DNA of 64,000 bases, taken from contig OZ241832.1 in NCBI GenBank assembly GCA_965202585.1, forward strand, positions 10,106,001 through 10,170,000, written 5' to 3'. The DNA is from Thalia democratica. Lineage: Eukaryota. Numbering within the stretch: position 1 is the first letter of the stretch; every line of letters starts with the position of its first letter. The position numbers and the translations under genes are program-made. The notes beneath the pieces were generated by a model. The model was not told the origin of the DNA and ran no database searches. It saw nothing but the letters and a program-made list of their open reading frames with translations. Below are positions 14,247 through 37,632 of the stretch, in pieces.

Positions 14247-16017
14247 AATCAGTAATCGCTAAAAAATTAATCTGCTTTGGACTCACTATCAACATACGTT
14301 TTTACCTTGTGAAGGTAGAAAAAAAAGTTTAATGAAAAAATTCTATAATGTTATTGCATAATAAAATGATAAAATAGTAGTAAAATAGCTTTTATTTTTT
14401 AAAAGATACTAGTAACTGGTGCAGTTTTATTTAGAACTTATTTTAATTGATACTTTTTATTTTTACAATATATATACTTTTGAGATTTAGAGCCTTTACG
14501 TTAGTTAATTGATTTATTTAAACAACTCTAATATTTCTCGTATAAGTAACTTAAAATTTAGAGTATAATATTCTTATATACTATAGCTTCTTACGGGCAG
14601 AATAGGAGATAAGTAAAAGGATAAAATGTATATTACCTATTAGTAATTGGTTAAAGTTGTTAGTTTGTCTTAGTAATATAAAATGAGATGAATAATAGTA
14701 AAACATACTAGAAAATTGGTAAAAGCTTAATGAGCACTACGAAATAAACAAACGAAAGTCAAACATAAAGCAATTGATAATTTAATTTTAAAACCAAAAT
14801 ACAAGATAAATAAGATATAATTATTACTTTCTAATTGTTTAGTAGAAGTAATTTAAATCAAAAATCAATTAAAAAACAGAAAGTGTTTTTTTTTGTTATC
14901 AAGGTTAAAATAAAGAAGATAATGAATTAATATTTTACATTTTCATAAGTTACAATTGATGGGTGAACAAACAATTTTATCTTCATCGTAAAACGATTAT
15001 TACATAAATATTACAAAACTAATTTAAAATATCAAAAATCATATAAATAATAGTAAGTTATAAAACAATCAAACAAATATTAATAAATTTCTTATTTTGA
15101 TAAGATTGTTTCTCATAAAAATTTTTCATAATATAAATACTTAGATTAAAACTATTAAAACTTCTATTTGTTTGTATTGTATAAGATTTTATTATTTAAA
15201 ATAAGTTATAGAACAGTTTCGTTTTTCAGTTTTAAAGTTAATTAAAACTTTAAAAGACTTACTAATTCTCTTTTAGCCTAACCCTTAAAAATAAAACTAC
15301 TTTGATCATTTAATATTTTTAATATAGTTTAAAACGAACGACTTTTTTTTGTTGGTTTCTTTAGAATATAGAACTCAATTGGTTAAAATTCCCAAAAAGT
15401 CTTAACAATATTACAACTCATAGAAAACTGTTTGGAATTAAAGTTATTTTACACATTACTAAATTTATAAATTTACATTGTGTTTTTACACAGATTATTG
15501 AAGCTTGTTATTATGTTTTTTAAAAGTAACGTGGCTTTTGAGTGATAATTTATATTGATCACAAAATATTTATGATTCTTGACTTTTTTTTATCTAACGT
15601 CGGTTTAAAATGGATTTTTATAATTTGGTAAGCATGCAAATATTAAACCTTTTAATAACAATATTTTGTTAAGCCTTGAGGTTTGAACTAGATCACGAAG
15701 AAACGATTATAGAGTAAACTGTTAAATATATAATTAGTTTGTTTTGTCAGGCAATGACAGTATTAAATGATTTCCTTATTGTTGTTGGCAATATTTGTAT
15801 TCGTGAATAAAAAAAAATTAAATTTGTTTTCTAGTTTTTACTTGATAAAAATTTATCAAAACAGTTTTTACAAATAACATTTTTTTACAACTAAAAAATA
15901 AGTATAATTTTATATACAGTACACAAATAATGTGTACTTGTAACATACAAGTGTGTATAAATAATTTAAAACGTGGTCTTAAAGGCAGATAGATCTCTTT
16001 ACTGAATTTAATCAATT

Positions 16018-16136
16018 AGAGCTGCAACAAAGTTGCTAGAAATTACAATTTAAAGATTAAGCATACATCCTGAACGTCATAATCAATTTTATTTTACATT
16101 TTAAAGAAACATGTTGTAGTATAACGATTTGTCGTA
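16018..16136 (-). repeat. Cassette copy
   Basis: AGAGCT-N7-AGTTGC ... ACATGTTGTAG ... GTCGTAAGC; spacing 100. Confidence 0.7.
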
Positions 16137-17840
16137 AGCGACTAAGCAGTATAAAGTTTATATCAATTAGTAACTGTTGGTTAAAGAAACTTTTTTTTCT
16201 TAGTTTTCCATTTAAAAAGATTACAGTTTTATTAAAGTACAACTGAAACTTATATAAACAAATAATAATTTATTTTTTTTTAACTAAAATTACAATAACA
16301 TTTTTTTAATTTGGTAGCTACTAATAAATTATTGGTAAATAGTTTATACATTCGTCCGAAGGAATCTTTACTGAGTTTAATGATGTTAAATTTCAATTTA
16401 TTGGTATATTTAAAAAATTCTACACGGTACGAGATTCAAAAACATAATTACTGTTTTTATATTTGTTAGATACACATTGATTCAACTTTATATAAATACG
16501 TTATATTTACATAAATCATTTCAACATCTATTTCAATACCTTAAAGTCTTATTTATAAATGAATCAAAAAACAAGTTTTACGACAAATCCTTAAGTTAAG
16601 GTAAGGTTGCTTTAAATAAAGTGTTTATTTGAAGCAAGTTAAGCTCAAAGTTAAAGATGATAAAATTGTCAGTATAAGAATATTGTTAATATAAGCATAT
16701 ATAATGTTTATTTATAATTCTGATACTCTAGTAATTATATATGCTTAATAATACTCACAGCAGTTTTTTGTTGCTAACGAACTTTAAACTACTAAGTAAA
16801 CAAAATTAACCAAACAAACAATATTTTTTTTTAATTTATTAAGTTTTTTATTTTATAATACAATAGTTGAATTCAAAGCTTAAAGATAAAAGAAACTTTT
16901 TTTAAATCATATTTATTTAAAACAGCTTTGCTACAGCTGGTAATAAGTGATAAAAATAAAAAGGATACTAGATTATAATTATTCACTGAAAGTATGTTTT
17001 TGATAGAAGTCTATGACTAACAAAATATTATACCTCTTCACTTAAATTGTAAATAGTCGAGCCATAGAGTAAGTTAAGCTGTTTGTTTTTTTTTAATTAA
17101 TAATTTTTTTGATTTAAGAAATACTTTATTAAAAAAAAAAGATAAGGTAGCATAAAATTAAAATACTTTTCATATAAACTTGGTATATAAACCTTATATA
17201 AACATATAAGGATACAACTCCGTATAAATATGCAAAAAGAAACACAAAAATTTGTTGGGAAAAATTAGACGTGTATTAAGTTTTAATGTTTTAATAGTTA
17301 TATATTACGAGCACTTAAAATAAAGCTCTTAATCTTTGTAATAAAAGATGTGTATTTAGTTTACTGCATAACAATAACATGTGGTAATCTTACTACTGCT
17401 TGAAAATATAAGATTTATTTAAAATTTAATAAAACAAATAATTTGATTTTAATATTTAAAATTTGTTTTGTAAATAAAACTTGTTAGTACTGGTTAATTG
17501 CTAAATAAATTAGGTAAATGTTAAGTAATTTATATAAAGTTGTACCAATATTTAATTTAAGAAACTAAAAATATAATGTTGAACTATCAATTATACATTT
17601 AACTATATTATCTAAATATAACAATCTAAAATTTTTGTCAATAATAAAAATAATTTAGTATTCTATTTTAAGTGTAGATAACTCTTTAGTTGATTAGCGA
17701 ACTCTTAAAATAACATTAGTGTGTACAAGTATCCCTCGATACCCTATTTAAGTTATAAAATAATAGTTTGATCGAAAAATTAAAACACATTTTAAACTAC
17801 ATATTATTGATCATTTTAAACTTGAAGTTTGTCAATTTCC

Positions 17841-17956
17841 TACGTCACATTATAAAATCACAACTCGTTGATTCAACGTGCTGGATATAAACCGACTGTG
17901 AAGTCTCTTCATACTTACACTTGATTGGTAGTTTAAAACAGCTGTAACTCAGCTGT
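17841..17956 (+). repeat. Cassette copy
   Basis: TACGTCACATTATAAAATCACAAC ... ATATAAACCGAC ... ACAGCT-GTAACTC-AGCTGT; spacing 97. Confidence 0.9.
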
Positions 17957-18894
17957 AGTTTAATCAAATAAATATTTTCTGTTGTGCAAGGGCCATTATA
18001 ATACAGTTCTGAATATAGCAAATTTGGAGTGATTAATACATCAAACAACTATCTTGAACTCAAACATTTATTTCTATGCCGAGGTGTTTAAATTTTACTG
18101 CTGGTTTTGAAATTAATTTAAATGTTAACAAAAAAATGTTCAGTAAACTTGACATTTAGTAAAATAGTTTGCTAAATGTAAAAGAACAAGCTCTGCTAAC
18201 AGACATTTATTTTAAGCGTTAAGTTATATGAACATCTAAGTTGAAAGATATTCATTCTGTCAAACATCTAGAATTTAATGAAAATTTTTTATGTATATAA
18301 CTTTTAATAAAGTTTAAAAGTTTTCAGTACGGACGGATTTTTTCAATTATGTAATATTTAATATACTAAAAAAATGTTCTGATGTCAATTACTTTTGGTC
18401 TTACTGTTAATATTTTTCGCTTACATACACTGTATGACCCCCTTTGGTTTCTTTATCAATAAGTTTTAGCTTAAAATAATAATAAAATAAAACTTAAGAC
18501 AAAAAGGATTTAAACAGTGTTAATAAACTTAATTTTATAGACTGGTTATCTTAAATCATAATGCAATAAAAAATAACTACATGTAATAGTTTTAGAAATT
18601 TTTTTGTCATACCATTTTGAAAACACCATAAAAAGTTTTTTATTATCAACTAAGTTTTTGTGAACGTAGCTTTTTTTTTTTTTCAGCAAGAGACTCGTTT
18701 TTTTGTTAGCTTTTAATATTAATTATAATAAAATAAAAATGTAATTATTTATCAACACGAAAAATACAGTGTTCAATTTTTTCTACGAAGATTACAGTAT
18801 AATACGTAAATTTTATTTATTAACTTATACTGTATTTACATAACAAGTAGATTAACTCTTTATTATTATTATATTAACTCTTCCAGCTATTAAA

Positions 18895-19020
18895 ATATTC
18901 GGAATCGGATTAGGTCGGATTCAAATTTCAAAATTGAGATTTGGATGCGGCAGAATAGTAATTTGAAAATATGATATGGATTCGGTTGAAACCAAAAATT
19001 TTAGATTCGATAGGTTGCTA
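18895..19020. mobile_element. MITE-like fragment with CGGAT/TCGG subrepeats
   Basis: GC-enriched ATTCGGAATCGGATTAGGTCGGATTC...GGATTCGG; a similar repeat sits inside the hAT at ~10030-10190. Confidence 0.4.
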
Positions 19021-19663
19021 CTTTAAAGTTAACAAACATTTATTTATTAAAAGTTAAAAAGTATCAGTAGACATAAGTCTTTTACATTTATGTTTCAATC
19101 ATTGGTATGTAAATTCAATTGTAAATTTGTTTTAAAATGTCAATTTAGATTTTTAATAGAGTTTTTTCTATTTATGTTGCAGTTGTTTGTAATGTTTATA
19201 TTTGCATTGTTCATTGTTTTCAGTTATCCAAATTTTAAATGACTTTTAAATCACTTTTTATTCCTATGTTATAATTATAAAGTATGCATATTCAAATTGC
19301 GCTGTACTGTAGTTTCTTGAAATAAACTAATCTTTACACGTTTATTTTAAAATTTGGGTTGGATATACAGTTCGTAAGCTCATAACTTATTTTCAAATCA
19401 CTTTAGTTTTTATTTTCAAATATACAAATTATTGTAAAAAACACTTTTATGTTACTAATTTAAGGTTGTTTTTGTTCGAATTTAAGGAAAATAAAAGCTT
19501 TATTTTAACACAGCATTTTTCGGCTAATACGCGCGTACCATACTGGCTATTGGTACCTAGCAGGACGTACCTAGGTGGCAGAATACTGTAAATAATATAT
19601 AAATATAGGTTTTTTAAATAAAATAAACATTTATAACTAAGACAAATCGATTTTTCACATGAT

Positions 19664-19775
19664 TACGTCAAAACTTTATCTCACAACTAGTAGCTGCGTA
19701 ATAAATAAAGATAATTTAACAATAACTATTGTCCAGACAGTGAATTGTAAATTGAAGCAGCTTTGTTAGAGCTGA
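19664..19775 (+). repeat. Cassette copy
   Basis: TTACGTCA...TCACAACTAGTAGCT ... GCAGCT-N7-AGCTGA; spacing 93. Confidence 0.7.
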
Positions 19776-20922
19776 AATACTTTATGAATACTTTAAAACT
19801 ATATCTAGTTAGATAGTGAACTACTGAAAGTATGTATATAGTAGAGGTCTTAGACAAACAAAATCTTTCATCTTACAATTAAACTGTTAAAGTCAATCAA
19901 TATAATAAATTAGTTTATTTTAAGTATTAAAGTTAACACTTTCTTTAGGCTTAAAAAAAGATATATCCGAAAAATTAGCTTTTTAGCACAAAATTAATAT
20001 ATTTTTTTAAAGTAATAAGCAATAAACTTTTATAACTATACTAATTTACATTTTCGTATAGTTTTTGAAGTAGAAAATTATAAAACTTTGTAATTTACAA
20101 AACTGAACATTTAAAATCAGAACTTATTATTTGTATTAATAAATTACATTCCTTGTATAAAACAACTAATTGTGGTTTAAAAACATTTATTTTACATTCA
20201 AGCTTTAAACTTAACTAGTTGTACTATAAAATACAAAGCTTTATAAAATGAAATTATTTAGTTGTTTGTTTAGTTATTCTGATTTACTTGGTGGTTTAAA
20301 GTTCGTTAGCAACAAAAAATTGTTGTGAATACTTAAATGCATATTCAATTACAATAGTATACAAACTATAAACCATCAGTTAGTATGCTTACATTACCAG
20401 TACTCTTATACTTACAATACTATTACTTAAAATTTCAAGCTTAATTTGCTACAAAATAACCATAGCTGTTAACTTTAAGATTTAAGCTTTTGATTTATAT
20501 CTTAAGTTTAAAATAAAATAGGTATTGATAGACTAGTTAAATAAGGTTGATTTTACGTATTTATGTAAAGTTGAAACAAAGATTATAAAAACCACTAAAT
20601 ACCCAAGAAAAGAAAAGACATTAAATATATATTTTATCTAAAAACAATTCCGATTTTTCAAATATACTATCAAGTTAACATTCAACACAATAAAACTCAG
20701 TGAAGATTCCCGAAGTATATAGAATTTATTTATTAAAGATTTGTAGGCACTATTAGCTTCTAAAATTTACTTTTGTTTTGTTTAGCAATAACTTGTCTTT
20801 ACAAGTTGACGTCTGTACCTTATTAAAATTGTATAAATTTTTCAAATGAAAACTTACAAAACAGAATAGTTTCTATCACAAGAAATTACTATTTTATGAA
20901 AACTTTAGATCTCTCAGTTGCC

Positions 20923-21042
20923 TACACCACATTATAATACTACAACATGTTACTTCAAAAAGTTATATTAAAATCGAGTTTGATTCAAAGAATGTATTCC
21001 TTTTCTGTTAATTCTAGTTTTCAGTAGCTTTCTTGTAGCTGT
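20923..21042 (+). repeat. Cassette copy
   Basis: TACACCACATTATAATACTACAACATGTTACTTC ... GTAGCT-N7-AGCTGT; spacing 101. Confidence 0.82.
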
Positions 21043-21315
21043 AATAAACTATTTAAAAACAAATTGAAATTCATTTAAAAACTTTTTTAAAGTTATCTAT
21101 ATAACTTTCTTAGAAAAAGTATTTTGATCTTTACTAGTATTTCAAAATTCTACGGGTATATGTTAAAGCAAAAGTTTTAGAACATTATTTGTGTCCTCAA
21201 GTATACGTCTGTGCCCACTTCTAATTATAAAACATTTTTACAGAAACTCTAACAAACAATATGTTTTGTCTCTTCACAGTTACGAGTAAATATAACATTT
21301 ACACCTCTCACTTGT

Positions 21316-21432
21316 TAACATAACAACACACAACTATAATATGAAGTTTGAATATTTTTATCAAATCAAGTTTTATTACTCAAAATATTCTTCAAGCTAG
21401 TTCAGCAATACTAAACAATTTTTAGCAGCTAT
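21316..21432 (+). repeat. Cassette copy (degenerate)
   Basis: Inverted paralogue of the 62472 copy; ACAATT..AGCTAT. Confidence 0.55.
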
Positions 21433-21730
21433 AATTTTATAAAACAAAATGTTTGTTTTCTTTTTTGATTGACGCTTAATATTGTTCTAGAAGTACGAAT
21501 TCAGCAAACAGTAATATACAAACTGAAAACAACAATCTCCTCGATTCAGATAACTATTTAAATTTGTGCCAGTTTTTTTTGAACTTAATCTGAAGCTGTT
21601 TTTTTTTTAATTTAAATTTTATTAAGCTCATTGAAATGATGTATCTTATATGCAGTTACGTTTGTACTAAAATTATCTTTCATTTGTTGATGTAACACAA
21701 CATGTAGGTACAACGAATAACATATAAACT

Positions 21731-21849
21731 TAGGTGACAATACACAACTGTAATATGTTGTTTTAATATTTTATATATAAATCGAGTTTTATTATAAAAC
21801 ACTTATCTAGGCTAGTTTAGTAATTAAAAACAAGCTTTCAGCAGCCGTT
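21731..21849 (+). repeat. Cassette copy (degenerate)
   Basis: Inverted paralogue of the 62059 copy; ATATATAAATCGAG ... CAAGCT..AGCCGT. Confidence 0.5.
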
Positions 21850-22111
21850 ATTTACTAAACAATGTCCAATTTATTTGCCATTTCATTGACGCTTAATGCT
21901 ATACTAGAAATATTAATTTAGCAAACAATTTTATACAAATCGAAAACAACAACCTCCTCGAATCTATTAACTTTTTTTATTGAACCAGCTTTTTTTATAA
22001 TTTAGTATAAATTTATAGTTGTTTATAAAATTTAAACTATAGGAAGTTTACTAAAATGATAAATTTTATGAGCAGTTAGTTACATTTGTATAAAATTTAT
22101 CTCTCATTTGT

Positions 22112-22228
22112 TATCTAATATTATAAAACCACAACATGTAGCTACAACAAATAGTATAAAAATTGAAGAGTTGTGAAAATTGTTAACTATTTACATTTTT
22201 AAAAGTTAAACAGCTTTCTAGTAGCTGT
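22112..22228 (+). repeat. Cassette copy
   Basis: ATTATAAAACCACAACATGTAGCT ... perfect ACAGCTTTCTAGTAGCTGT; spacing 98. Confidence 0.85.
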
Positions 22229-23118
22229 AATTTAATCATTTAAAATTTATGCTATCTTTGCATTAAAGCAGGCTTACAAGCAGTCAAATACGAATTCTAC
22301 TTACGAATGAAAATATTTTAGTCGCTATATATTTAAACAAACTCATAGGCAGAGGATCAAACTTAAAAATTTGTGTAATAAATGTTTTACATTGTAAAAA
22401 AAATATTTTAACATAGAATAATTAGTTTATAAAAATCATAAGTATAAAATAATTAACGGCTTATATATTTAAAATTTGTGCTTAAAACATCGATTTCTGA
22501 AATTATTAGTATATTTATATTTGATGTGGTATGATGTGATAAAAAAACAAATACGTATAAAAGTTTCATCAATACTTTTTATTTAGAAGTTACCAAAAGT
22601 TTCATCGTTTTTTGCTTATTTTCTACATAAAACTTATTTTCATTATGGTTTATATAATTACTGAAAATGAATCAGTTTAATTTACAAAAGAAAGTTTAAT
22701 TGATGCGCTTACGAAAATATTAAAAAACAATGGTATACCTATGTATATATAAAAAAATAAACATCTTTAACAAGTTTATAATGTAGATACTTAACAAATA
22801 AGTTACTATAATTAACAAGAAAATAACAACATTATTAAAAAAATTGTATTGTTCAAATTGAATAAAGGCATAAATCAATGGAATTTAAAATTAAAATTTT
22901 AAATAAGGTTTGTTTTGAAGTATTAACACAATAAACATATTAATAAAGTTATCCTGGTTGTCAAAACTCAGTTTTTTGCATAAAAAACAAAGTTTTCTAA
23001 TATTAAAAAATTTACAAATATTAATACATACATACTCATCAAGAAATTATTTTAAAAGTAAAATAAAATAGTCTCTCTCAATAGAAGTCACTATCGAAAA
23101 TGACGTTTCTTTATTAAC

Positions 23119-23235
23119 TACTTTACATCATAAAACCGCAACATGCAACTTTAACTTTTAGTTTATATTCGAGTATATTAAAAGTATAGTAATTTTTAAG
23201 TTTCAAACAGTTTTAAACAGCTTTCTAGTGCAGAA
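23119..23235 (+). repeat. Cassette copy (second half-site lost)
   Basis: CATCATAAAACCGCAACATGCAACTT ... ACAGCTTTCTAGT followed by TE-like GC sequence; spacing 98. Confidence 0.7.
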
Positions 23236-23558
23236 GTCGACAGGCAGTTAGTGGTCGCGGGCAAAATTTTAAGTTTACAAAGTCTTCCCGGGCCGCAGTT
23301 TTAGTTTTAGTGGCATTTGATAACTTTTTGGTTTTAATTTAAGTCACACTAGAGAAAAGTTTTATTTTAATTCACCTTATTATTTTAAATGAATTTTAGC
23401 TATACATAGATTGCCAACTTGAATTAATAGTTATTAGAATACAATTTACATTGAAAAACATACTTAAGTGTTAATAAACTATGTACTTTCATAAGCACTT
23501 AGTAAGTTAAACTTAATACTTTCATAATTTTACTTACAACCTAACTCTCTATAAAATC

Positions 23559-23737
23559 TGGTGATGTACCGGACCCGGATCTGGACTTTTTTTTCTAATT
23601 AGAATCCGGCCGGAACGAAATACGGACTTTTTTTTTTCAAATTACAATCCGGCCGGAATGTCAAAATCCTGATCCGGATATTAGACAAAAATGGCAATAT
23701 CCGGCCGGACCCGGATAGTGAGTCCGGTACATCACAA
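23559..23737. mobile_element. hAT-type MITE
   Basis: TIR GTGATGTACCGGA/TCCGGTACATCAC; internal ATCCGGCCGGA repeats; 7/8 TSD ATAAAATC/ATAAAAAC. Confidence 0.85.
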
Positions 23738-24140
23738 ATAAAAACTAGCCTGAGTCAGAATGAGGTTTTAAAAAACTGAAAAAAAAAGAACTTTAATCTA
23801 ATAATAAGTTAAACAGCTAGCCACAAGGTTTACAAATATAGGTGTTATTTACAATTAAAAATCTAAAATCAAGTTCTTGAGCAAAATACACTAGAAAATT
23901 ACAGAATATTGAAAACTGGATCAGTTCAAACTCATTCAAAATCTAAAAGAAAACTAGCCTGAGTTTTTATAAAAAAACTATACTAGGCTGAGGCAGTCCA
24001 AGATTTTTTTAAATTCGAAAAAATTTTCAAACTAGCAGGGTTGCCACTGTTTTAGTCAATAAAACTAGCTAGAGTGAGTATAAACAAGCCTAAGTCAGAA
24101 TGTGGTTTTTAAAAACTGAAAAAGTTACTTTAATCTAATA
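23738..24140. mobile_element. Fragments of a second hAT-like family (CAGGGTTGCCA end; AAAACTAGCCTGAG repeats)
   Basis: Duplicated ~80-bp block (23741 and ~24080); terminus CAGGGTTGCCA at 24036; related ends at 8678, ~36765 and 52179. Confidence 0.5.
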
Positions 24141-25026
24141 ATCAGTAGAACAGCTAGCAAAGGTTGAAAATTTAGTAGTAAAGTTGTGGACTGATTGTGG
24201 TACACTTAACTTATTAGTACTACCCATCGTAATTAAATCCTACCTTGTTAAATTAATATCTAACAAATACTAAATTCTAACTGAGACTACTTTCTATAAT
24301 CAGACACGACAGTTTTGAGTGATAAATCTTTAATATAAAACACAAAAAAAAATACTAACATATACAAAATTATTAATTACTTTGGTAACACTTTAAAAAC
24401 TCGAAGCTATTAAATCTATATCAAAAGACTTAAAACAATAAACTAAAAATTAAATAAAACTTTTAGTAAAAAAGAAACTGTAAAATTTTTAATAAACTAT
24501 CAAACTATAAACCTGGCTTAAACATTTAAACAATTAAACACCAGTTGAAATATTCACTTTTAAAACAAAACACTACTTACAATAAGCACTCACAAAAAAG
24601 TTCAAGATATTTTGTTGCTTCAAGCTGCACACCAAACTAACTAACTGCTTAAATACATATAAACTGTCTGTCATTTTCTGATGTTTTGTTGCATCAGTAT
24701 TTAGTTTGAAACATTTCGTCATATGATTCTCATTGGCTCGTACATTCAACCGTATTAATTCTAAATATTCTCTGAGCTCAACTTTAAACAATAAATAATG
24801 CAAGTATGCATTCCAAAGTTTTTAATTTTACAACATATGTAAAGAGTTGCATTTCTGAAATGTTTATTTTATAGTTTAAATGTAAACAAAGGTGAATTAG
24901 TCGCGTGTACAAAATGAGCCAATCATGGTAGGTGTTTAATTTTAACGGACGAAAATGATTCTTATTAATTTACAGAGGGTTTGTTTTTGAAAAAATACTT
25001 TTTAGCATTCTCTTCTTTAATAACTA

Positions 25027-25133
25027 GATCCGGGTCCGATTTTTTTTTCAAATTAGAATCTGGCCGGATCCGGATATCAGACAAAAATGGCAATATCCGG
25101 CCGGACCCGGATAGTAAGTCCGGTAAATCACTA
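25027..25133. mobile_element. Truncated copy of the 23559 MITE
   Basis: Near-identical right half ending CCGGTAAATCACTA. Confidence 0.85.
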
Positions 25134-25220
25134 CTTGTTAACAACCTGGGTAAAATTAATTACTTGTTCTTTTGTTAACAGCAGTTATCAATATATACTA
25201 ACTTGACATCTCTCTACTGC

Positions 25221-25339
25221 TAAATTCATTTTATAAAATACAAGATAAGGCTTCAGTGTGTTTTTTATAAACAAAAGTGTTATGAGCATTCAGTAACTAC
25301 AAATTATTTACAAAACTAAAACAGCTTTCTAGTAGCTTT
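25221..25339 (+). repeat. Cassette copy
   Basis: TCATTTTATAAAATACAAGATAAGGCTTC ... ACAGCTTTCTAGTAGCTTT; spacing ~100. Confidence 0.72.
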
Positions 25340-26071
25340 TATTTTCCTTAAACTTATATATAACAAAAAACAACAATACACAACATAAAAAAAAACTTAA
25401 TAGAACAGGAAAATATTTGTTTTTTATTGTTTTTTTTACTAGGTAATGTTAAACTTGTTAGCAATCGATGTTTAAAAACTAAACTTATGTACATAAATAA
25501 GTTATCTAAATTATAATCGAGAATAAAAAAAAATATACATTTGCTTTAAAAATCTGTTTTTTTAACCTGTTATTATTTTTAATTAAATTTGTACGCTTAA
25601 TTTGCTTCATAACAAAATGTTTGATAACTCCATTACTGCATCAAAAAAAAGAGTTCCATATGAAAATTTATCTAAAAAACTTTATTTCGAGGTTTTTCAG
25701 TTTTTTATTTGTAAATAAAACAAATTAGTTTTGATAGAGTTCTTAAAATTAATTATAAGACATTACGTAATTATTTCAAGTTTTGTTAATTATTGAATAG
25801 GAAATAAAATAATTAACCACCAATTTTTAATATTAAAAGGATATTAAACTATTTAAAGATGTTATTAAAGTAATGTAAAACATAATAAAACACAATAAAA
25901 ACTTTTTTAAAGTATAAATTAATCACTTTTTTTGAGTTTTTATGTCATTAATATCCATTTAAACGTTGACTATTTTGAGAATCAAAAATTATAATGTTTT
26001 GTTCAATACTAGTTTAACAAAAGAATTTCCTGAACATCAGTTACTGATCTATTCAATTTTTTAAAACTGTT

Positions 26072-26189
26072 TACGTCATATTATAAATTTACAACATCTA
26101 GCTTCAAAGCTTTGTATATAAATCGAGTGTAAATCTATTTAATATGTTAATTTGTATTTTCTTATTTTTAACAGCTTTCTGGTAGCTGT
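26072..26189 (+). repeat. Cassette copy (near consensus)
   Basis: TTACGTCATATTATAAATTTACAACATCTAGCTTC..TTTGTATATAAATCGAGTGT ... ACAGCTTTCTGGTAGCTGT; spacing 99. Confidence 0.92.
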
Positions 26190-28052
26190 AAACTCATTAC
26201 AATTGATTGCCAAGTAAGAGTTTGAACTTTTGTTGCAGTCCTAAAGTTTAAACTCAGTGAGTGTGTATCATAATAACAATATGAATTATAAATGATTCAC
26301 CTTGTCTATAAAGTAAAGAACAATGAACGCTTAAATTAAAATACACTAATACTATCTAAAGTGTTGTAGTATGTAATAACATTTAGAACTAACTGTACTT
26401 ATCTTTAAAATATAAGTATAGTTTTGTTATTTATATTTAAATTACTATGTTTAATTTAATGCAAAATGTGCATATATAAAATAGACCTCAATTCACCTGA
26501 GTTCTGACAAAGTTTATTTTAATTTAAGGTAAATATTTTATTTATTTAGAGCTGTTTATATATGTTTCAAAAACTTTTGGCAACTGTAATGTTAATAAAG
26601 TAGTTTAAAAGAAGTCATTTTCATGAAAATTTTCAAAGCAGCGAAACCTGGGTCTTTTAAGTTAATAAATCATTGTTTATTTTCGGATAAAATAAAAACC
26701 TTGACCGATTATTTCACTTAAGGTAGAAAGTTTTATTCAAAAACTTTGCAATATATAAACTATTAGTTTTCTACATTATTTTTAATCTGGACAACATAAT
26801 TATTATATTAATTATGACTGTGTTATAAAATTATGTTAAAAAATATGATTAACAATGTTTGTCAATCAATCTGAAGTATTACTTAAATTCAACTAAACAA
26901 TAGCAGTGTTGTTTAAGAGTTTAATATATTTTGTCATTTGTTTTCATGTTTAAACTTTCATATTTATTAGTTTTTAACTTTATTTTAGCTTAGGGATGGA
27001 CATCGTTTTATTTTTGCGGCCAAATGTAAAAAATTTTAGTTGTAATTTAACTTATTTTACAAGAGTTATACAAATTTCTACCCATTTCGAATAATTTTTA
27101 TATGACGTATCTGTACTTAGATCAAGTGTAAGTATACTTTTTTTAATAGTGAATAAATCAAGTCGTAATATAAAATCACATAAAGTAGTTGTAACATTTA
27201 ATATATATATATAGTATTGTGATCGTGATTTTCAGAGGTTTTTCTGAATATAGGAACATTTAACTTGATTTTTTAAAATTAAACTGAAAATTAATTCGAC
27301 AATTTCATTTTGATTTTTTTTTCTACACACTATTTAAACACGATGATCACGATTAAAAAACTCTGTAAAGTAAAACAGACAAAGCCATATATACTACTAA
27401 TAGATATTATTGATACTAAAACAGCCAAGTATTAAGTGTAAATTTACTAAAAATCTTTAAAGCTCATATTGTTTGCTCGCTGCCCAATTTTGTAGCTAAA
27501 CCCAGTTCGTTTATTTTTTATATGATATAAAATACTAGATTGCTTAGCTAAGTTAAAGTAAAATTATTTATTCAAAATTCTTAAGATATAAAAATTCTAA
27601 TTCCCTTTGATACTTGCTTTAACCTTAATAAAAAAGAATTTTGACTAGGTATATGTATTGAACTCTGTTAAAACCGCTACTGAATCGAAGTATAGTTTTA
27701 AAAATGTATTTTAGTTATCTTATACTTAAATTTTACTGTTAAATGTTAATCATATACTATTTATAGTTTTAGTCCAGCTTATTTGTTGTGTAGTGCTCAT
27801 TTCAGTTAATATAGTTATTTTATCGTGTTAAAAGATTAATATCAATTAGATGAAAAATACAAATAACTATAAAAGAGAGAACGCTGATTACAATACTTTT
27901 AATACTTTTTATCTATCTCTGTAGTGCTTATAAATAGTTACACTTAAATTTGGGACTAACAAGTTTCGCTTTGATTTTGAGGCGATGAAATTTATTATAA
28001 TTGTAAACTAAGAAAAAAAAATTTCTCTTCAGAAACTTTTCTCTTACAGGCT

Positions 28053-28170
28053 TACGTCACAATATAAAATCACAACACATAGCTTTTATGTAAAGGTTTT
28101 AATATGTGAATCACTCAAAAGTTGTAGTTATTACATAAATTTTGATTTTGAACAGCTTTCTAGAAGCTGT
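28053..28170 (+). repeat. Cassette copy (near consensus)
   Basis: TTACGTCACAATATAAAATCACAACACATAGCTT ... ACAGCT-N7-AGCTGT; spacing 99. Confidence 0.92.
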
Positions 28171-28810
28171 ATACTACTTGAGTAAAATTAATGATAACTG
28201 CTGCTTTGAAGCAAGCTTATTAAAAAAATATAAATTCAGCTCATAACATTTAACACATTGAAAAATACTTTCATCGATTCTAACAAATTTTGAAAATGCT
28301 GCTATTTTGGTTAGTAAAATTAAATAAAATTTTTAATTACTGCTTGTTTGATTATATTTGAAACATTAAAAAAAAAGAATTGAATAAACTTGTTTTCTAC
28401 CATAAAAAATTACGATGTCTTAGCGAACAAGCTCTACTAAGGGTGGTTGTTAAAAGTAGTAATTTTTAAATACATATCTAGTTAACTTTTAGTTACTTAT
28501 TGTATTTTACTGTAAATTTTCAATCATGTGTCATTTAAATATAATGGAAAATGAACTTAACGTTATTATAACCATAAAAAAACTCAGTTTTCTTTTATTT
28601 TTTAATAAGTTAGAAATGCTTTAGTCTTAAGTAGCTTTTGGAATCAATTTTTATTTTACTTTATCGAAAAATTCAAAAATTAAAAACTATTGTTTAGAAA
28701 CACAAGTATACATCTGTTTAATATTTAAACTTGAAAAAAATAAGGAAAACTAATCAAAGTGATAGGACATCTCACTATAATTAACCGATACACTAAAGTT
28801 GTCAATTGCT

Positions 28811-28939
28811 TACGTCATGTTTTATAACAAAAATATTCAGCTGTGATGTGTAGTATATATATATATATATATACAATTACATAGGCGTCTGGTAGTTGCT
28901 AAAAATTTCACAAAATTTAAGTAGCTTTTTAGAAGCTGT
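28811..28939 (+). repeat. Cassette copy with (TA)n expansion
   Basis: TTACGTCATG...; (TA)n at ~28855-28872; GTAGCT-N7-AGCTGT; spacing 110. Confidence 0.8.
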
Positions 28940-29177
28940 AATATGTTTAAATAAAACTAGTGGTAAAGCATTAAGTGATTAAAATAGATAATCTTAATTG
29001 TTTACATCTATAATAGATCACCAGCTTCTATTTGTAATGTAAAGCTCGTAAACCAATTGAAATTCTTAAAACCGTTTATATTACTTTGTAACTTTGTATA
29101 TTAAATAGATTTGAAGCAGCTGTAACTTATATCTTTAATTTCGCAAAAAGGTGTTATTTTTTTATATCTATAAACTT

Positions 29178-29287
29178 AACGTCACAATAAAAATATGTAT
29201 TATAAACGTTTTGTATACAAAATAAGTCTAACTACTCAAACCAGGCTCTTCTACAGTCGCTTTTTTTAACTGCTTTGTTATAACTGA
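29178..29287 (+). repeat. Cassette copy
   Basis: AACGTCACAATAAAAA..TTTTGTATACAAA ... ACTGCT-N7-AACTGA; spacing 91. Confidence 0.65.
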
Positions 29288-29465
29288 AATTTATTTATAT
29301 CTACAGCTATTTGATGCTTATATTCTAAAATTGAATGTAGCTGATGAATGCAAATTCAACCGGCTGTTGTTTATATATTTTACAGTTAACAGCAATTACA
29401 CACAATAGGTTAATATTTAGTTTTAAGTATTGTATAAACTTGATATCTCTCAATAACCTCAATAA

Positions 29466-29582
29466 CCTCTCACTTTATAACCTTGCACGCTATAGTTTCA
29501 CATTGTTGTTTTTATACTGAATGTAATTTTTAAGCGTAGCTACTAAATTTTGACTAATTTTAAACAGCTTTCTAGTAGCTGC
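29466..29582 (+). repeat. Cassette copy
   Basis: TCACTTTATAA ... ACAGCTTTCTAGTAGCTGC; spacing 98. Confidence 0.8.
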
Positions 29583-30256
29583 AATTTTATCTAAGTTATC
29601 ATTTAGCTAACTGCTTTAGAAAGCAGCCTTAAAATGCAAAGCTATAAAAGCCTTGATTTATACAAATACTATACTTTCGATTACGTATAAAAATAAAAAC
29701 AAAAATTACAATTATGATAAAAACAATAATAGTAAAAACATGTGGTTTTGCCGTTAATTTTTTTAGTTTATTTATAAAATTAGAATCAGGTTTGATAAAG
29801 TTATTAAAAGTTAAAACTTAATTTTTAATCCTCTATATAAGGTTATTTAATGTTTATTAGAAAAACAAACTAATCATTTATTATACATAACAATAAATTT
29901 AGAAAAAATAAAATTTTAGTAAATTTTTTGAATATATTTTACAAAACAATTATTATGCTTTACAGAAAAGTACGTTTTTATTTCGAGTTGTGTAAATATA
30001 TCAGTGAGCTAATATTATAAATATTAAAAAGTTTACTAGAAGATTCGCTTGAAGTATTGATAAAATAAACATGTTTGAAAAGTTAATTGTTTGATTTGTC
30101 TATTTTTAAGCCACTTTTTATTCTTTTTTAGAATAATATCTTTGTTTATAAGTATCTTAATTTATATAATTTTCATATATATAAATTTACTTTGTTGGTT
30201 ACTTAAGAAAATAACCTGTTACCTGTCACTGATGCCAGTATAATTTTTCAAATTCG

Positions 30257-30375
30257 TACGTCACGTTATAAAATTCAAAGCATGTAGGCTTACATTTTGT
30301 ATTCAAATAGAGTAAAATTAACAGCAATACTAACCTACTTTTTGACAAAGTTATATACAGTTTTCTAGTAGCTGT
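30257..30375 (+). repeat. Cassette copy
   Basis: TACGTCACGTTATAAAATTC..CATGTAGGCTT ... ACAGTTTTCTAGTAGCTGT; spacing 100. Confidence 0.87.
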
Positions 30376-30863
30376 TACTTTTATTAACGTTTAATTGACC
30401 TCCGCGCAGTTAAGAAATGCATGTTAAGCGAAGTTTCAATTGAAATAAAAAAAAAGTCTAAATAAATTTTAATTTAGAAGATTAAGTAGATAAAGAGGGT
30501 ATGGTTTAATTTAAGCGAGTATTTTTAAAAAAGTAACTTATTAAAACAGGCAAGTAGAAAAAACTGCGTAACCAAAAATATTAAAATAATGCTATAAAGT
30601 AAATTTTTTATAAAATGAAAACTATAAGTTCTCTAAAAAAAAAATAATTGCATTTAAAATTTGGTATCCTTTAAAGTTTACGTCACATGTAATCAACGAC
30701 AAATAGCTGCAATCAGCATTATAAATAGATAACGATTTATGAACTTATTTTAAATAAACTGATTTAATATTTGAAAAAAGATTTAAAGAGTTGATACTTT
30801 TTAACATTTTAACTTAAAAATAATTAACAATAACAATTTTAATTAAATAGCAACTAGAAAACT

Positions 30864-30990
30864 CAGTGGTCGTCAAAGTGTACACTGGTATACAGTAGTG
30901 TACAAAAAAATTTTTTTGGGTTTGCCCGAAATCTTTAAGGTACACGAAACTCATTAAGGGTTGCACGAAATTTTTAGATAGCACAGAAAA
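30864..30990. mobile_element. hAT-like terminal fragment (CAGTGGTCG end)
   Basis: Reverse-complement homologue at ~37450-37578 ending ACACTGTGCCGACCACAG; ACACGAAA subrepeats. Confidence 0.6.
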
Positions 30991-31266
30991 ATACAAAGAG
31001 TTAAATTAAGTATGTAGTTAATATTTAATAAAGTATTTAAAGAATACTGAACTTGGGATTTTGTAGTAATTGCGGAGAAGTGTTTAATTAATAAGGATGT
31101 AAGACAAAGCCATATAACTAAAATATCAATGTTGAAATATGATAAAACAAATAAAGAGGTCAATAAAAAAGAGAATCATACAAAAAGCTTTCAAAAGTAT
31201 GCTTGATTAAAATTTGTAAGTGTAATTTTGCCATTATTTGTTTAGAATATTATTAAACAAATAGCT

Positions 31267-31382
31267 GTTCTCACCAGCAGTAACCACAACATGTATATGC
31301 AATATAGTGTATATAAACAGAGTTAATATATTTGTAAGTTGATAATTTTGTTCATAATTTCAAACAGCTTTCTAGTAGCTGT
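31267..31382 (+). repeat. Cassette copy
   Basis: AACCACAACATGT..GTGTATATAAACAGAG ... perfect palindrome; spacing 97. Confidence 0.82.
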
Positions 31383-32200
31383 AATTTTAATCAAACAAGC
31401 AACAACTAATCGCAGTATTTCATACATATTTTGTTAGTTTTTACTACTCATTTTTTGAGGAGTAAAACCGTATTTGCCTGAAAAAAAAACGAGCTTGTTG
31501 TAGTTTAACAACTTGCTTTAAGTTTATTTTTTCACAATCTTAGTTTAAATAAAAAGTGTTCGACAATTTGTTTTTACCATGGTTTGATACTTCTATGCCT
31601 TTAAATTTGTTAAATTTCACTTGGTGTTAAATTAATAAAACAGATAGTTTTTTTTAGCTGTATTTACGTTTATATGACTTGATATATCTCAATTGCCTAC
31701 ATCACATTCTAAAAACACAACTTGTAACGTTTTGTTTATAAATTGTATTTATAAATGATTAGTTCAATTTATAAGAAAGTGATAGACATTACGAAAATGT
31801 TATGATCAGTTTTAGTTAATCAAAGTATTTTTGTAACATTATTTTCACTAAAACTTTGAACCATCACCTTAAAATTACTAAAAAATCTATAAATATGTCA
31901 GAACTATATAAGTTAAATTAAGTAAAAACAATATGGAACCAACTCGTTATCATAAAAAGTTATTTTTCATTTTTATTAAACATTGAAAATTATATACTCC
32001 TCCAGTTAGTACAAGTATTTTGATAGTGACTATAAAAATGTTTAACTTTTACAGTATTTTTTTAGCTAACAGAGTTTTGCTAAAACAGAGTGTGTTTCAA
32101 AAAAAAATAACCTTAGTAAAAAAAAAAAATTAAAACTTTAGATTTACAATTTTTTACATAAGCATATATAGATTTCTAAAATTGATAATTCTTGTTAACC

Positions 32201-32317
32201 TACGTCAAATTAAAACTTTATTCCATGTAGCTTTTACTTTTTGTATATAAACCAAATATTTTTAATTGGTGCATCAATATTTTTAATGAAAAATTTAAAC
32301 AGTTTTCCAGTGTCTGC
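32201..32317 (+). repeat. Cassette copy
   Basis: TACGTCAAATTAAAA..CATGTAGCTTT..TTTTGTATATAAACC ... ACAGTT..; spacing 98. Confidence 0.78.
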
Positions 32318-32828
32318 GAATTTGATAAAATTAATAAAAGTAAGTTGTCCGCCTGAAAGAGCAGTTTTGAAAATTGAGATTAGAAACACCATCATCTACC
32401 ATTAATCTGATATATTTACGATGTGAATTTTAAATGCCAGTTCTTAAATGTTGGCTGTTAGGTATCAAAACCTAAGCTAGGATTTAATTTTCAAGTAATT
32501 AGTTTAAAACGGAAATTCTTAATAGTTTTGATTATTTATTATATCAAAATTTTTTTTAATGTTTTCGATGTGAGTTTGTAAAACGTTATACTTATATTAA
32601 AAATATTATATAACAAATAAATTCTTAAGCAAATTTAAATTAAACATCCTTTTTTTCCTGCTTTTGTAATAAACTAAGAAAAAAGCCAAAAATTTAGAAT
32701 CTTCGAAGTATGTCAACTAGATTAAACGCTATAACTTTTAGCATATCAATTTTTAAATTCTAGTCAAAAATAATCATACTAGTTATACAAAAATAAATAT
32801 AAATTATAAAATCTGCTATACTACAGAT

Positions 32829-34299
32829 CAGAGGCGTGTCTAGACTTTTTTCAAAGGGGGTTCACAATTTTTTTATTCTTAATTTCTCGCTTAAGTACGC
32901 ATTTCTTAGGTATGCACTGCCAATTAAATAGGCAATATTTAGCCGAAAAACTCTGTGTATGAAATGCTTTTTTCTGCTTAGAAAAAAAAAAAATAAGTTT
33001 TAATGGGAAAAAACTATATAATATTTTTTATTATACTGTATCTAATTTACATAAATTAAAACTAGAAGAGCCGAAAATAAAAACATTTATAATAATATAA
33101 TTTTTCAAGTAATTTAATCTATGAAAATTTAAATTTCACTAAAAAAAAATGGGTAATTGCTTAAGATGATGTCGCATTAATATCAAGCTAAAATTATTTT
33201 AAATTCAATGTTGTCATTTTTTTAAGTAATCTCTTTTACCATAGTTATAGGTTAAGAAATTATATTTTATAAATATATAAATAGATCTTATTTATCATAA
33301 ACCAATAAAAATAAAATATTTGATTGCTTTTAATTTTTTTAATAATGCATATGATACAATACTTATTTACATTACTGTACTGTAAAATAAAATAAATTAA
33401 GTATTTTAGTTTATAAAAAAAGAATTTAATTCTAACTATGTATTTATATAGCTTGTTTAAAACGAAGTACAATTTTAGATCAATCATACAAGGCTTAAAA
33501 TATTGATTTTAAGCCTAAAATTGAGGTTCAAAAAGCCATTTAACACGATATAACTTCAGCCTGATATTGGTGCAACATCATCCTAGGTATTTACCAAAAA
33601 TGTTTAGACTTTTACAACTAAATTAAAATATCTTTAGACTGTAGTTAAATGTTTGCCTAATGGTGGAGGAATTCTAATAATAATTTTGAAAACTCTCTGA
33701 GTTAAAAAACTCAAAAAATCAGGAATTAACTTATAAATAAATATTCAAAAACCATTAAATGATACAAGAATAAAAAGAACTTTTCAAGGTTTAAAGCCAG
33801 TTGGTTGACATATAAACAAAAAATATAAATTTCAAAGTACAAAAGCTTAACACAACATTATTATATACAACCAAATAAGTATAATAAAATTTAAGTGATT
33901 GTATTGGACATTTTTCAAATAAAATTGTACTTACTAGTTCAAAAACAATTCTGTATAAAATTTTTTTACGATAAGTAACTATTTATAGTTGGAACTAAAA
34001 GCACCTTAGTAAAACGTTTCCTAGAAGAAAATGCTACTTTAAAACTTTTACCTATTATGACATCACAATTGAAATTTCATTTGAAATTTATTTCAGCTGG
34101 GCAAAAAAGAGCATTTTTTTTTAAGGAAACTTTGTAATCTTTCAGTGCTATAAATTCAACGTTCATTATTCAAAGTTTATTTAATAACTAAAACAAAGTC
34201 TATAAACAACGTTTTTAGTGATATTCTAAAAACCTTTTTTTTTCTTTTTTTTTTCAGGGGGTTCCTAGGAAACAGGAAACCAATCAAAACACGCCCCTG
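32829..34299. mobile_element. Defective hAT DNA transposon
   Basis: TIR CAGAGGCGTGT / ACACGCCCCTG; 6/8 TSD CTACAGAT/TTACAGAC; weak decayed transposase-like text on the minus strand ~33540-33820. Confidence 0.8.
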
Positions 34300-34468
34300 T
34301 TACAGACTCAGTTTCGTTGCTTGTTTAGAAAAAGCAATTGTACAACACTTGTACTTACATGTATTACTACTTCTAGACTCCTCAACATAACAACGCGTAG
34401 TTTCAAATAAATATATTATTAGCTTTTTTAGCAAGCTATCATTTATGTATATTGATACTCTCAACTAA

Positions 34469-34586
34469 TTAGTAACATTATGAAAACAATACATGTAACT
34501 TCAATATATTGTTAATAAAAACGAGTATTATTTGAAGAGTAAGTGTTTAATTTAGTAAAAATTTAAAACAGCTAAATACTAGCTAT
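34469..34586 (+). repeat. Cassette copy
   Basis: CATTATGAAAACAATACATGTAACTTCAA..AAACGAGT ... ACAGCT-N7-AGCTAT; spacing 99. Confidence 0.78.
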
Positions 34587-35182
34587 AACATTTATTAAAA
34601 TCATAAAAGCGACATATAACTTTTGTTGGCTTGCTGTCCTTAAAGTTCGTAGAAAAAACCAAATATTTCTGGTCAATAATGTCCTCTGTTTTTAGATATG
34701 CATTTAAATATTCAATTTATTAGCTAAATTAAAGAAAAGTTATTTCTACAACAATCTTAAGGTATAAAAGTTTTCAATTTCCTTTGATTTCTGCTTTAAT
34801 CTTGACGATAAAGAGTAGTCACCGGTTTGTTTATTACTATTCAATAAAACCACTAGACAATCAAATTTAATTTTTGAAATTTTTTATTAAATTAAGTCCT
34901 GCATAATTGTTGTGATGTGCTCACTTCACTTAAACTTTTTTGTCGTTAAAAAACTCATTTATATTACATGAAATATAAAAAAAGCTTTAATCAAGAACAC
35001 ACATAATATAATACTTTAACTAACTTTTATTTATCTCTATAGTGCTTATAAATAGTTACACATTAACTTTCAGTTTAACAAGTTTACTATTTTATTTTCT
35101 TAAACATGAATTGTGTTATGATAAACTAACTAAAGTGATTTTATCATCGGATATTTCTCTATCAGAGGCTTACGTAGAGGCT

Positions 35183-35302
35183 TACGTACCATTATAAAAT
35201 CACATTATATAGCTTCGATGTATAGAATATAAATAGTTAGGAATTTCCGACTATTGTGATGGTTATTTCAAGTATAATTTTAAACAGCTTTCTAGTAGCT
35301 TT
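35183..35302 (+). repeat. Cassette copy (duplicated AGAGGCTTACGT)
   Basis: TTACGTACCATTATAAAATCACATTATATAGCTTCG ... ACAGCTTTCTAGTAGCT; spacing 101. Confidence 0.9.
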
Positions 35303-37578: not shown

Positions 37579-37632
37579 GTCTATTAAATAATACCGCAGT
37601 CCAAGAACTAGATTTAGCAGTATAAACTTAAA

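What the first reader, a model, noticed from the sequence alone, without database searches (positions are those of the whole stretch)
26072..26189. Fixed ~99-bp distance between the CRE-like TTACGTCA and the ACAGCT-N7-AGCTGT palindrome
Hand-measured spacing is 97-101 bp in 38 of 54 complete copies (e.g. 99 at 26072 and 28053, 100 at 46424, 58837, 61226 and 2649), while the sequence in between is often unalignable. Length conservation without sequence conservation points to a geometric constraint such as promoter architecture or cooperative binding, not neutral decay. Spacings do not cluster on multiples of 3. Caveat: degenerate copies were partly placed using the expected spacing.
Basis: seen in the sequence. 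Interest (0 to 1): 0.75.

Follow-up and report, generated by a model that had tools for sequence, protein, structure and literature searches.

The report
Fixed spacing inside promoter-like repeat modules
The roughly 99-base distance is real: it is the internal geometry of about 58 copies of a small promoter-like unit in which about 31-33 bases are free in sequence but held in length, most likely tiny RNA genes, though no RNA data exist to prove it.

Summary
The spacing peak survives unbiased calling. With the two boxes called independently, 20 of 32 pairs lie at 97-101 bp. With a position-free search, 29 of 58 dyads (28 of 42 with a credible box A) have TACGTCA 97-101 bp upstream, against 2.8% by chance.

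The interval is not mostly unalignable. About 60 of its 93 bases are conserved blocks in rigid register: box A, a proximal block, TATATAAA-yCGAGTGT, and a T-rich flank of the dyad. Only about 31-33 bases carry no information, and their length varies by about ±2.

Neutral indel decay, calibrated on duplications inside this window, is rejected if the whole interval is free. It is also rejected with only 41 bases free, provided copies lie ≥0.7 substitutions/site from their ancestor, which the fully randomised variable segment supports. A direct paralogue test is underpowered (7/17 vs 40/130, p=0.4), and a third or more of copies are off-mode, with weaker boxes.

The dyad shows no covariation, so an RNA hairpin is unproven. 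No RNA runs exist.

Best reading: an array of individually promoted small-RNA mini-genes. Earlier follow-ups of this scan reported the same kind of module on other pieces of this genome.

The parts
659..63005 (.). Array of about 58 complete (70 nhmmer hits) copies of a ~135-nt module. Median spacing is 874 bp. Copies lie in strand blocks: mostly minus to 16.1 kb, plus from 17.8 to 45.5 kb, mostly minus from 46.0 to 63.0 kb.
   Evidence: Iterated nhmmer; de-duplicated dyad calls and strand string.
26060..26079 (+). Box A of the exemplar copy; the TACGTCA core is at 26072-26078. Family consensus is TCTCAATTGCtTACGTCAc.
   Evidence: The core is nTACGTCA in 18 of 40 good copies; only one is a perfect TGACGTCA.
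26081..26107 (+). Proximal (PSE-like) block, TTATAAAAtCACAACATGTAGCTTCAA. It sits in rigid register with box A (offset 0 or -1 in 22 of 22 independent call pairs).
26115..26130 (+). TATA-like block with a conserved post-TATA motif (TATATAAA + yCGAGTGT). It is in rigid register with the proximal block (offset 0 in 8 of 10).
26131..26161 (+). Zero-information segment (about 31-33 nt). Sequence is random between copies; length varies by about +-2 in on-mode copies.
   Evidence: Information profile. Pairwise identity is 0.315 against 0.316 for random sequence and 0.324 for equal-length pairs. TATA-to-dyad SD is 2.3.
26162..26170 (+). Conserved T-rich left flank of the dyad (aTAATTTTAA). T at position -5 is found in 100% of on-mode copies.
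26171..26189 (+). Dyad block B, ACAGCT-TTCTrGT-AGCTGT, followed by AAT. The 7-nt centre is itself conserved and oriented.
   Evidence: As RNA it folds into a 6-bp hairpin of -7.3 kcal/mol, but there is no covariation.
28053..28170 (+). Second exemplar copy; distance 99.
46424..46548 (-). Best-scoring copy on the minus strand (nhmmer 88 bits); distance 100.
28811..28939 (+). Off-mode copy (distance 110). The excess length is a (TA)n run grown at the TATA block. Its paralogue at 58042-58141 keeps 99.
62881..62994 (-). Off-mode copy (distance 113). A 13-nt insertion lies between the TATA-like block and CGAG, relative to its 87%-identical paralogue at 20923-21024 (distance 101).

Best explanation
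The 99-100-bp distance is the internal geometry of an oriented ~135-nt module repeated about once per kilobase across this non-coding, 24% GC window. Three DNA boxes sit in rigid register: a half-CRE box A, a proximal block 15 nt on, and a TATA block with a conserved post-TATA motif. These form a compact snRNA-type or TATA-type promoter. The next ~31-33 nt are free in sequence and are followed by a T-rich stretch and the ACAGCT-N7-AGCTGT block. I infer that each module is a separate small-RNA mini-gene. Transcription would start about 28-30 nt after the TATA box, which is 24-27 nt before the dyad. The sequence-free part is then partly the TATA-to-start gap, set by the initiation complex acting as a ruler, and partly a short, copy-specific 5' head of the RNA, followed by a constant tail holding the dyad. 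Selection keeps the length in working copies, about 55-65% of which sit within +-1-2 nt. Copies that took indels, such as TA-repeat growth or a 13-nt insertion, drift and lose their boxes. Shown here: the boxes, their register, the spacing peak, the randomness of the middle segment, and the excess over neutral indel decay. Inferred only: transcription, the start site, the polymerase, and the RNA product.
For: The peak survives unbiased calling. Box A to proximal block and proximal block to TATA block are nearly invariant, and the TATA block to dyad distance has SD 2.3. The middle segment is random between copies. Indel rates calibrated in this window are 0.084 and 0.104 events per site per substitution. 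With these, neutral simulation is rejected for a free 100-nt interval at every age tested, and for a free 41-nt interval at >=0.7 substitutions/site. Off-mode copies have weaker boxes on average; only the proximal block is significant (p=0.004). The conserved promoter part shows no consensus RNA structure on either strand, as expected of DNA signals. The window has no long ORF (maximum 91 aa), no tRNA and no Rfam family. Copies lie in same-strand blocks. In known SNAPc promoters the PSE-TATA-start geometry works as a molecular ruler with a tolerance of only a few nt (PMC11696126). Unchecked leads from this scan report the same module type on other pieces of this genome, with boxes said to match the animal's own U1/U4/U6 promoters.
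Against: No RNA run of this organism is available, so no transcript, start site or 3' end was seen. No initiator signal stands out 20-50 nt after the TATA block. The dyad arms vary independently: 81.0% paired against 81.0% in shuffles, and G-T wobbles equal A-C mismatches at 27 each. So neither an RNA hairpin nor the transcribed strand is supported. In alignable paralogues, indels in the variable segment are as frequent per substitution as in flanks (0.127 vs 0.126), and net length change is not significantly smaller than in control windows. In the young 87% duplication, the boxes (8.7% differences) evolve about as fast as the flanks (~11%). The match to this genome's real snRNA promoters could not be tested here.
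Confidence: 0.5

Rival explanations
1. The module is purely a DNA-level regulatory unit. [quoted passage not shown] The dyad is not part of a functional RNA hairpin. Whatever is transcribed is not a constant-tailed small RNA.
For: There is no covariation or strand-specific wobble in the dyad. Both arms and the asymmetric 7-nt centre are conserved as sequence. RNAalifold keeps only 4 weak pairs at -1.1 kcal/mol. Only 13 of 58 copies share any conserved sequence downstream of the dyad.
Against: Many copies may be dead, which erases covariation signals. Another cluster of this genome is said to carry a different dyad (CTGTCT-N5-AGACAG) at about the same distance, which would favour structure over sequence (untested). 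A dyad is not needed to explain a fixed promoter-to-start distance.
Confidence: 0.22
2. The modules are very short piRNA-like or other guide precursors. Transcription starts about 25 nt before the dyad and stops at the conserved T-run just upstream of it. This gives a ~20-nt copy-specific RNA, as in nematode 21U-RNA genes, and the dyad serves as a downstream termination or processing signal.
For: TTT at -6 to -4 is the most conserved feature outside the dyad (83%, 100% and 90% T). There are many clustered, strand-blocked, individually promoted units with a sequence-free product, as in C. elegans piRNA loci, which use snRNA machinery (PMC6436959, PMC6317315, PMC7917550).
Against: Only about 60% of copies have four Ts. 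No position shows a 5' U or YR signal. The Ruby motif is absent (2 hits against 2.5 expected). Variable segments have no excess matches, sense or antisense, within the window. There are no RNA data.
Confidence: 0.13
3. The modules are neutral remains of an old dispersed or segmentally duplicated repeat. The spacing peak is inherited from the founder and has simply not yet decayed.
For: A model with only 41 nt free and copies at about 0.35 substitutions/site from the founder reproduces the peak. The window is a mosaic of old segmental duplications (29 HSPs of >=300 bp). The paralogue test shows no significant length protection. The young duplicates show near-neutral box divergence.
Against: Neutral decay cannot keep four boxes at 60-90% per-site conservation while the 31-33 nt between them reach random identity. 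The variable segment evolves only about 1.3 times faster than the flanks in paralogues, so its saturation implies ages at which the neutral model is rejected (P<0.001 at >=0.9). There are no TIRs, coding remnants or uniform decay expected of a transposon.
Confidence: 0.1

Closest known systems
SNAPc-dependent snRNA-type promoters (Pol II snRNA genes and type 3 Pol III genes such as U6)
   Same: An ordered activator site, proximal element and TATA box lie upstream of a short non-coding product. Element-to-element and element-to-start distances are held within a few nt because the bound complex acts as a molecular ruler (PMC11696126). A conserved motif sits directly after the TATA box.
   Different: The activator box sits 15 nt from the proximal block, not about 200 bp upstream. 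The identity of the proximal block as a PSE is untested here. There are dozens of copies per 64 kb, and no known snRNA lies downstream.
Caenorhabditis elegans type I piRNA (21U-RNA) loci
   Same: Many clustered mini-genes, arranged in strand blocks. Each has its own small upstream motif at a fixed distance from a short product of unconstrained sequence. The transcription machinery derives from that of snRNA genes (PMC6436959, PMC6317315, PMC7917550).
   Different: There is no Ruby motif and no 5' U signal. A TATA block and a conserved downstream dyad are present here. The taxon is different, and expression is unknown.
U7 snRNA
   Same: The predicted layout is a specific 5' head, a U-rich stretch and a terminal hairpin, about 50 nt in all, behind an snRNA-like promoter. 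In U7 the arm length acts as a ruler.
   Different: None of 58 copies has the U7 Sm site RUUUNUCYNG. One of 58 has the UCUUU box (2.4 expected by chance). Heads differ between copies. There is no Rfam U7 hit (features from PMC5054213).
CRISPR-like repeat-spacer arrays (superficial resemblance only)
   Same: Constant elements flank a unique segment of fixed length.
   Different: The units are not in regular tandem (spacing 63-5610 bp). Each has its own promoter-like blocks. The genome is eukaryotic and AT-rich, with no associated genes in 64 kb.

Membership tests
snRNA-type (SNAPc) promoter | A proximal sequence element matching the species' own snRNA gene PSE, 40-70 bp before the start | not testable with these tools
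Earlier scan notes assert the match, but I could not check it.
snRNA-type (SNAPc) promoter | A narrow, fixed PSE-to-TATA spacing | tested here: inconclusive
   The proximal block to TATA block offset is invariant in 8 of 10 independent call pairs. However, the PSE boundaries are unknown, so the absolute spacing cannot be compared with the 15-18 nt of human genes.
snRNA-type (SNAPc) promoter | TATA box 20-30 bp before a mapped start site (Pol III type 3) | tested here: inconclusive
   A TATATAAA block is present in register. There is no start-site data and no initiator signal.
U7 snRNA | U7-specific Sm site RUUUNUCYNG before the 3' hairpin | tested here: not met
   0 of 58 copies.
U7 snRNA | Conserved UCUUU box in the 5' histone-binding region | tested here: not met
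   1 of 58 copies, against 2.4 expected by chance.
U7 snRNA | Match to the Rfam covariance model | tested here: not met
   There is no hit even at E<=5.
Nematode type I piRNA loci | Ruby motif CTGTTTCA about 40 nt upstream | tested here: not met
   2 hits against 2.5 expected, neither at a fixed distance from modules.
Nematode type I piRNA loci | 5' U of the product at a fixed distance from the motif | tested here: not met
   No position between the TATA block and the dyad flank exceeds 66% T in a 40% T background.
Structured RNA hairpin (dyad as RNA element) | Compensatory or wobble-tolerant variation of the stem | tested here: not met
   81.0% of cells are paired, against 81.0% in shuffles (263 of 500 shuffles as high). 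There are 5 double changes against 4.2 expected. G-T/T-G counts equal A-C/C-A counts, 27 each.
Transposon-derived repeat (MITE, SINE, Helitron end) | Terminal inverted repeats or target duplications, internal Pol III boxes, and roughly uniform decay along the unit | tested here: not met
   Conservation is block-wise, with a zero-information core. There are no tRNA-like parts and no coding remnants.
Canonical CRE (ATF/CREB site TGACGTCA) | Palindromic octamer | tested here: inconclusive
   The consensus is T/C-TACGTCA. Only 1 of 40 good copies is TGACGTCA, though the CGTCA half-site is kept.

The most novel reading that the evidence does not exclude
A chordate relative carries large arrays of individually promoted mini-genes. 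Each would encode a short RNA with a unique, fast-turning-over 5' head of fixed length and a constant tail. This would be a guide-RNA-like repertoire analogous to, but independent of, nematode 21U piRNA genes, with the fixed A-to-dyad distance as its genomic signature.
Probability: 0.3. Interest if true: 0.85.

Novelty: new variant of a known kind. Interest (0 to 1): 0.6.

Why it matters
If these modules are transcribed, they would be a second animal example, after nematode piRNA genes, of many autonomous mini-genes whose product sequence is free while its length and position are fixed. They would be a possible new class of guide RNAs in the sister group of vertebrates. The spacing statistic is the main sequence-only evidence that the units are under selection and are not decaying repeat DNA. 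This report shows how strong that evidence is: real, composite, and only moderately above a carefully calibrated neutral expectation. It also shows where the evidence is missing: there is no RNA and no hairpin covariation.

Tried and rejected
RNA evidence:
- The look-up of sequencing runs listed only three DNA-type contig runs and none on record as RNA.
- Read laying therefore showed only genomic contigs. It also showed a depth spike over the dyad block, meaning the block is a high-copy word genome-wide.

Relatives elsewhere:
- Two metagenome scans with the dyad gave nothing, or 14 unrelated microbial chance hits.

Known RNA families and genes:
- Rfam gave nothing at gathering thresholds. At E<=5 it gave only a chance SNORD104-like hit. 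There are no tRNAs.

Coding potential:
- No ORF exceeds 91 aa under the standard code. Long ORFs under the ciliate code are what chance gives at 24% GC.

RNA structure:
- There is no conserved structure in the promoter part on either strand.
- There is no covariation in the dyad.
- Folding z-scores are modest, -0.6 to -1.5.

Candidate family tests:
- U7 features fail.
- The Ruby motif is absent.

Targets of the variable segments:
- They have no excess matches within the window.

Alternative dyads:
- Promoter-only copies lack any consistent alternative dyad.

Helical phasing:
- Off-mode distances show no 10-11-bp periodicity.

Literature:
- Searches on tunicate snRNA promoters, salp small RNAs and tunicate SL RNA genes found nothing describing this module.

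Full report
**The window.** It is 24% GC throughout and has no N runs. Its longest ORF under the standard code is 91 aa. It has no tRNA and no Rfam family at gathering thresholds or at E<=5, apart from one chance-level snoRNA-like hit. Iterated nhmmer, started from twelve copies, converges on 70 hits. About 58 of them are full length, to a 135-position model. After removing dyads called on both strands, 58 modules remain. Their median spacing is 874 bp and they lie in strand blocks: mostly minus to 16 kb, plus from 17.8 to 45.5 kb, mostly minus from 46 to 63 kb.

**Checking the observation.**
- The six example distances are correct.
- Both motifs are far above chance: 13 TTACGTCA against 2.0 expected, and 10 dyad sites against 0 expected.
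- I called box A and the dyad independently with PWMs, each set at about one false hit per window and with no spacing prior. This gives 32 same-strand pairs at 80-120 bp, 20 of them at 97-101 and 18 at 98-100. The other 34 pairs within +-600 bp are scattered singly.
- I also took the best-scoring box A anywhere 20-200 bp upstream of each dyad. Of 58 dyads, 29 have it at 97-101, where chance gives 2.8%. Among the 42 with a credible box A, 28 do.
- The peak is therefore real.

**What lies in between.** The interval is not mostly unalignable. The per-column information profile and anchored logos show this order:
- box A: TCTCAATTGCtTACGTCAc;
- a proximal block: TTATAAAAtCACAACATGTAGCTTCAA;
- a short linker;
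- TATATAAA followed by yCGAGTGTra;
- about 31-33 nt of zero information;
- a T-rich flank, aTAATTTTAA, with T at -5 in 100% of on-mode copies;
- the dyad ACAGCT-TTCTAGT-AGCTGT followed by AAT.

Independent calls of each block give these registers:

| Interval | Offset from consensus |
|---|---|
| Box A to proximal block | 0 or -1 in 22 of 22 |
| Proximal block to TATA block | 0 in 8 of 10 |
| TATA block to dyad | -3 to +2 (one at +6), SD 2.3 |

So the 99 bp is a sum of a rigid, alignable promoter-like part and a sequence-free part of about 41 nt (counting the flank) with a tolerance of about +-2.

**Neutral expectation: inputs.**
- The variable segment is random between copies. Mean pairwise identity is 0.315, against 0.316 +- 0.005 for random 32-mers of the window.
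- Among pairs of on-mode copies with exactly equal A-to-dyad length, identity is 0.324. Gapped alignment scores do not exceed shuffles.
- I calibrated indels inside the window. A 2.1-kb inverted duplication (19917-22004 against 61930-64000, 11% different) has 21 indel events per 228 substitutions, or 0.084 events per site per unit distance.
- Twenty-nine older segmental paralogues (66-87% identity, 15.9 kb aligned outside modules) give 477 events, or 0.104.

**Neutral expectation: simulations.** I simulated 42 copies on a star tree.
- If all 100 nt may change length, the observed 28 of 42 in a 5-nt window is never reached at any tested distance from 0.35 substitutions/site upward.
- If only 41 nt may change, the observed peak is typical at 0.35, marginal at 0.5 (P about 0.04-0.1), and rejected at 0.7 (P<0.01) and at 0.9 (P<0.001).
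- The lower indel rate gives the same picture, shifted to about 1.0.
- In the paralogues the variable segment evolves only about 1.3 times faster than the flanks (28.9% against 23.5% differences). Its complete randomisation among unrelated copies therefore implies roughly 0.9 substitutions/site or more per lineage. At that age neutrality is rejected.

**Limits of that conclusion.**
- For 17 paralogous module pairs, the net change of A-to-dyad length is within +-1 in 7. The same holds for 40 of 130 control 100-nt windows in the same alignments (Fisher p=0.41).
- Gap events per substitution are the same in the variable segment and outside modules (0.127 against 0.126).
- In the young duplication, box divergence (8.7%) is close to that of the flanks.
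- Indels clearly do hit modules. There is a 13-nt insertion in the copy at 62881-62994 and (TA)n growth at the TATA block of the copy at 28811.
- Off-mode copies have weaker boxes on average, though only the proximal block is significant (p=0.004).
- The most economical picture is a mixture. A constrained class, about 55-65% of copies, sits within +-1-2 nt of the mode. The rest is a decaying tail.

**The dyad.** As RNA it forms a 6-bp hairpin of -7.3 kcal/mol and leaves the upstream part single-stranded. Folding z-scores are only -0.6 to -1.5. Across 58 copies the arms vary independently:
- 81.0% of cells are paired, against 81.0% in shuffles;
- there are five double changes, against 4.2 expected;
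- G-T/T-G cells (27) equal A-C/C-A cells (27), so no strand is marked as RNA.

RNAalifold keeps only four weak pairs on the sense strand and none on the antisense strand, and finds nothing in the promoter part on either strand. The dyad is therefore conserved as sequence, including its asymmetric centre. An RNA hairpin is possible but is not supported in this window.

**What the modules probably are.**
- The order of an activator-like box, a proximal block and a TATA block, their rigid register, and the absence of RNA structure in them fit DNA signals of a compact promoter.
- In SNAPc-dependent promoters the PSE, the TATA box and the start site are held within a few nt by the bound complex (PMC11696126).
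- A start about 28-30 nt after the TATA box would lie 24-27 nt before the dyad. The sequence-free segment would then be the TATA-to-start gap plus a copy-specific 5' head of about 15-17 nt, followed by the U-rich stretch and the dyad.
- I could not observe this. No run on record as RNA holds this DNA. The laid contigs are genomic. They show only that the dyad block is a very high-copy word, and that two contigs of a second sample span modules without gaps.
- No initiator signal is visible.
- Only 13 of 58 copies share a further downstream block, AATGCTAACTGCT...AGCAG.
- The variable heads have no excess matches within the window.

**Earlier notes from this scan.** Follow-ups on other pieces of the same genome describe the same kind of module. 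They assert that its boxes and spacing equal those of the animal's own U1/U4/U6 genes. They also report another cluster with a different dyad at about 96 nt. I treat these as leads because none could be tested here.

**Comparison with known systems.** The module works most like an snRNA-type promoter in front of a very short product. At the level of genome organisation it resembles nematode 21U piRNA loci (PMC6436959, PMC6317315, PMC7917550). It is not a member of either on the tests available:
- the Ruby motif is absent;
- there is no 5' U signal;
- there is no known snRNA downstream.

The U7-like layout also fails the U7 features. None of 58 copies has RUUUNUCYNG, one of 58 has UCUUU against 2.4 expected, and there is no Rfam hit. 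Nothing related was found in metagenome contigs or in the literature searched.

**Verdict.** The length constraint on the sequence-free part rests on a moderate statistical margin and on an age argument, and transcription remains unproven.

Noticed in passing
window 19919-22191 vs 61715-63998: A 2.3-kb inverted duplication at 87% identity, carrying three module pairs. I used it to calibrate the indel rate.
   Followed up: yes
window, e.g. 27995-29738 vs 59012-57257; 4633-5638 vs 43138-44165; 17344-18598 vs 55297-54016: The whole window is a mosaic of old segmental duplications, direct and inverted (29 HSPs of >=300 bp at 66-77% identity). This largely explains the strand blocks of the modules.
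   Followed up: partly
window 21323-22162 and 61736-62592: A local tandem duplication of a unit of about 415-450 bp that contains a module (about 71-73% identity between repeats). It is present in both arms of the inverted duplication.
   Followed up: no
13 modules, e.g. 28177-28241, 40919-40983, 48263-48328 (minus), 35310-35373: A subfamily shares a further block 20-85 nt after the dyad (TTAATGCTAACTGCT, 6-9 nt, AGCAGgCTTAaA). It could form a second short hairpin. It is absent from the other 45 copies.
   Followed up: partly
window 57401-57600 and 61601-61800: Summed k-mer depth of genomic contigs is 4-9 times the local level in the two runs of sample S1 and about 1.5-3.5 times in the third run. 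Many contigs break at 57434-57437, just beside the dyad block. This shows that the dyad block is a high-copy word across the genome.
   Followed up: no
window 44160-44215: A promoter-only copy (box A at 44109) is followed by a short tandem of GTTAACGATTAAT units in place of the usual dyad.
   Followed up: no
window 11945-11992 (minus): A weak SNORD104-like C/D-box hit (20 bits, E=2.7, far below the gathering score). It is probably chance.
   Followed up: no
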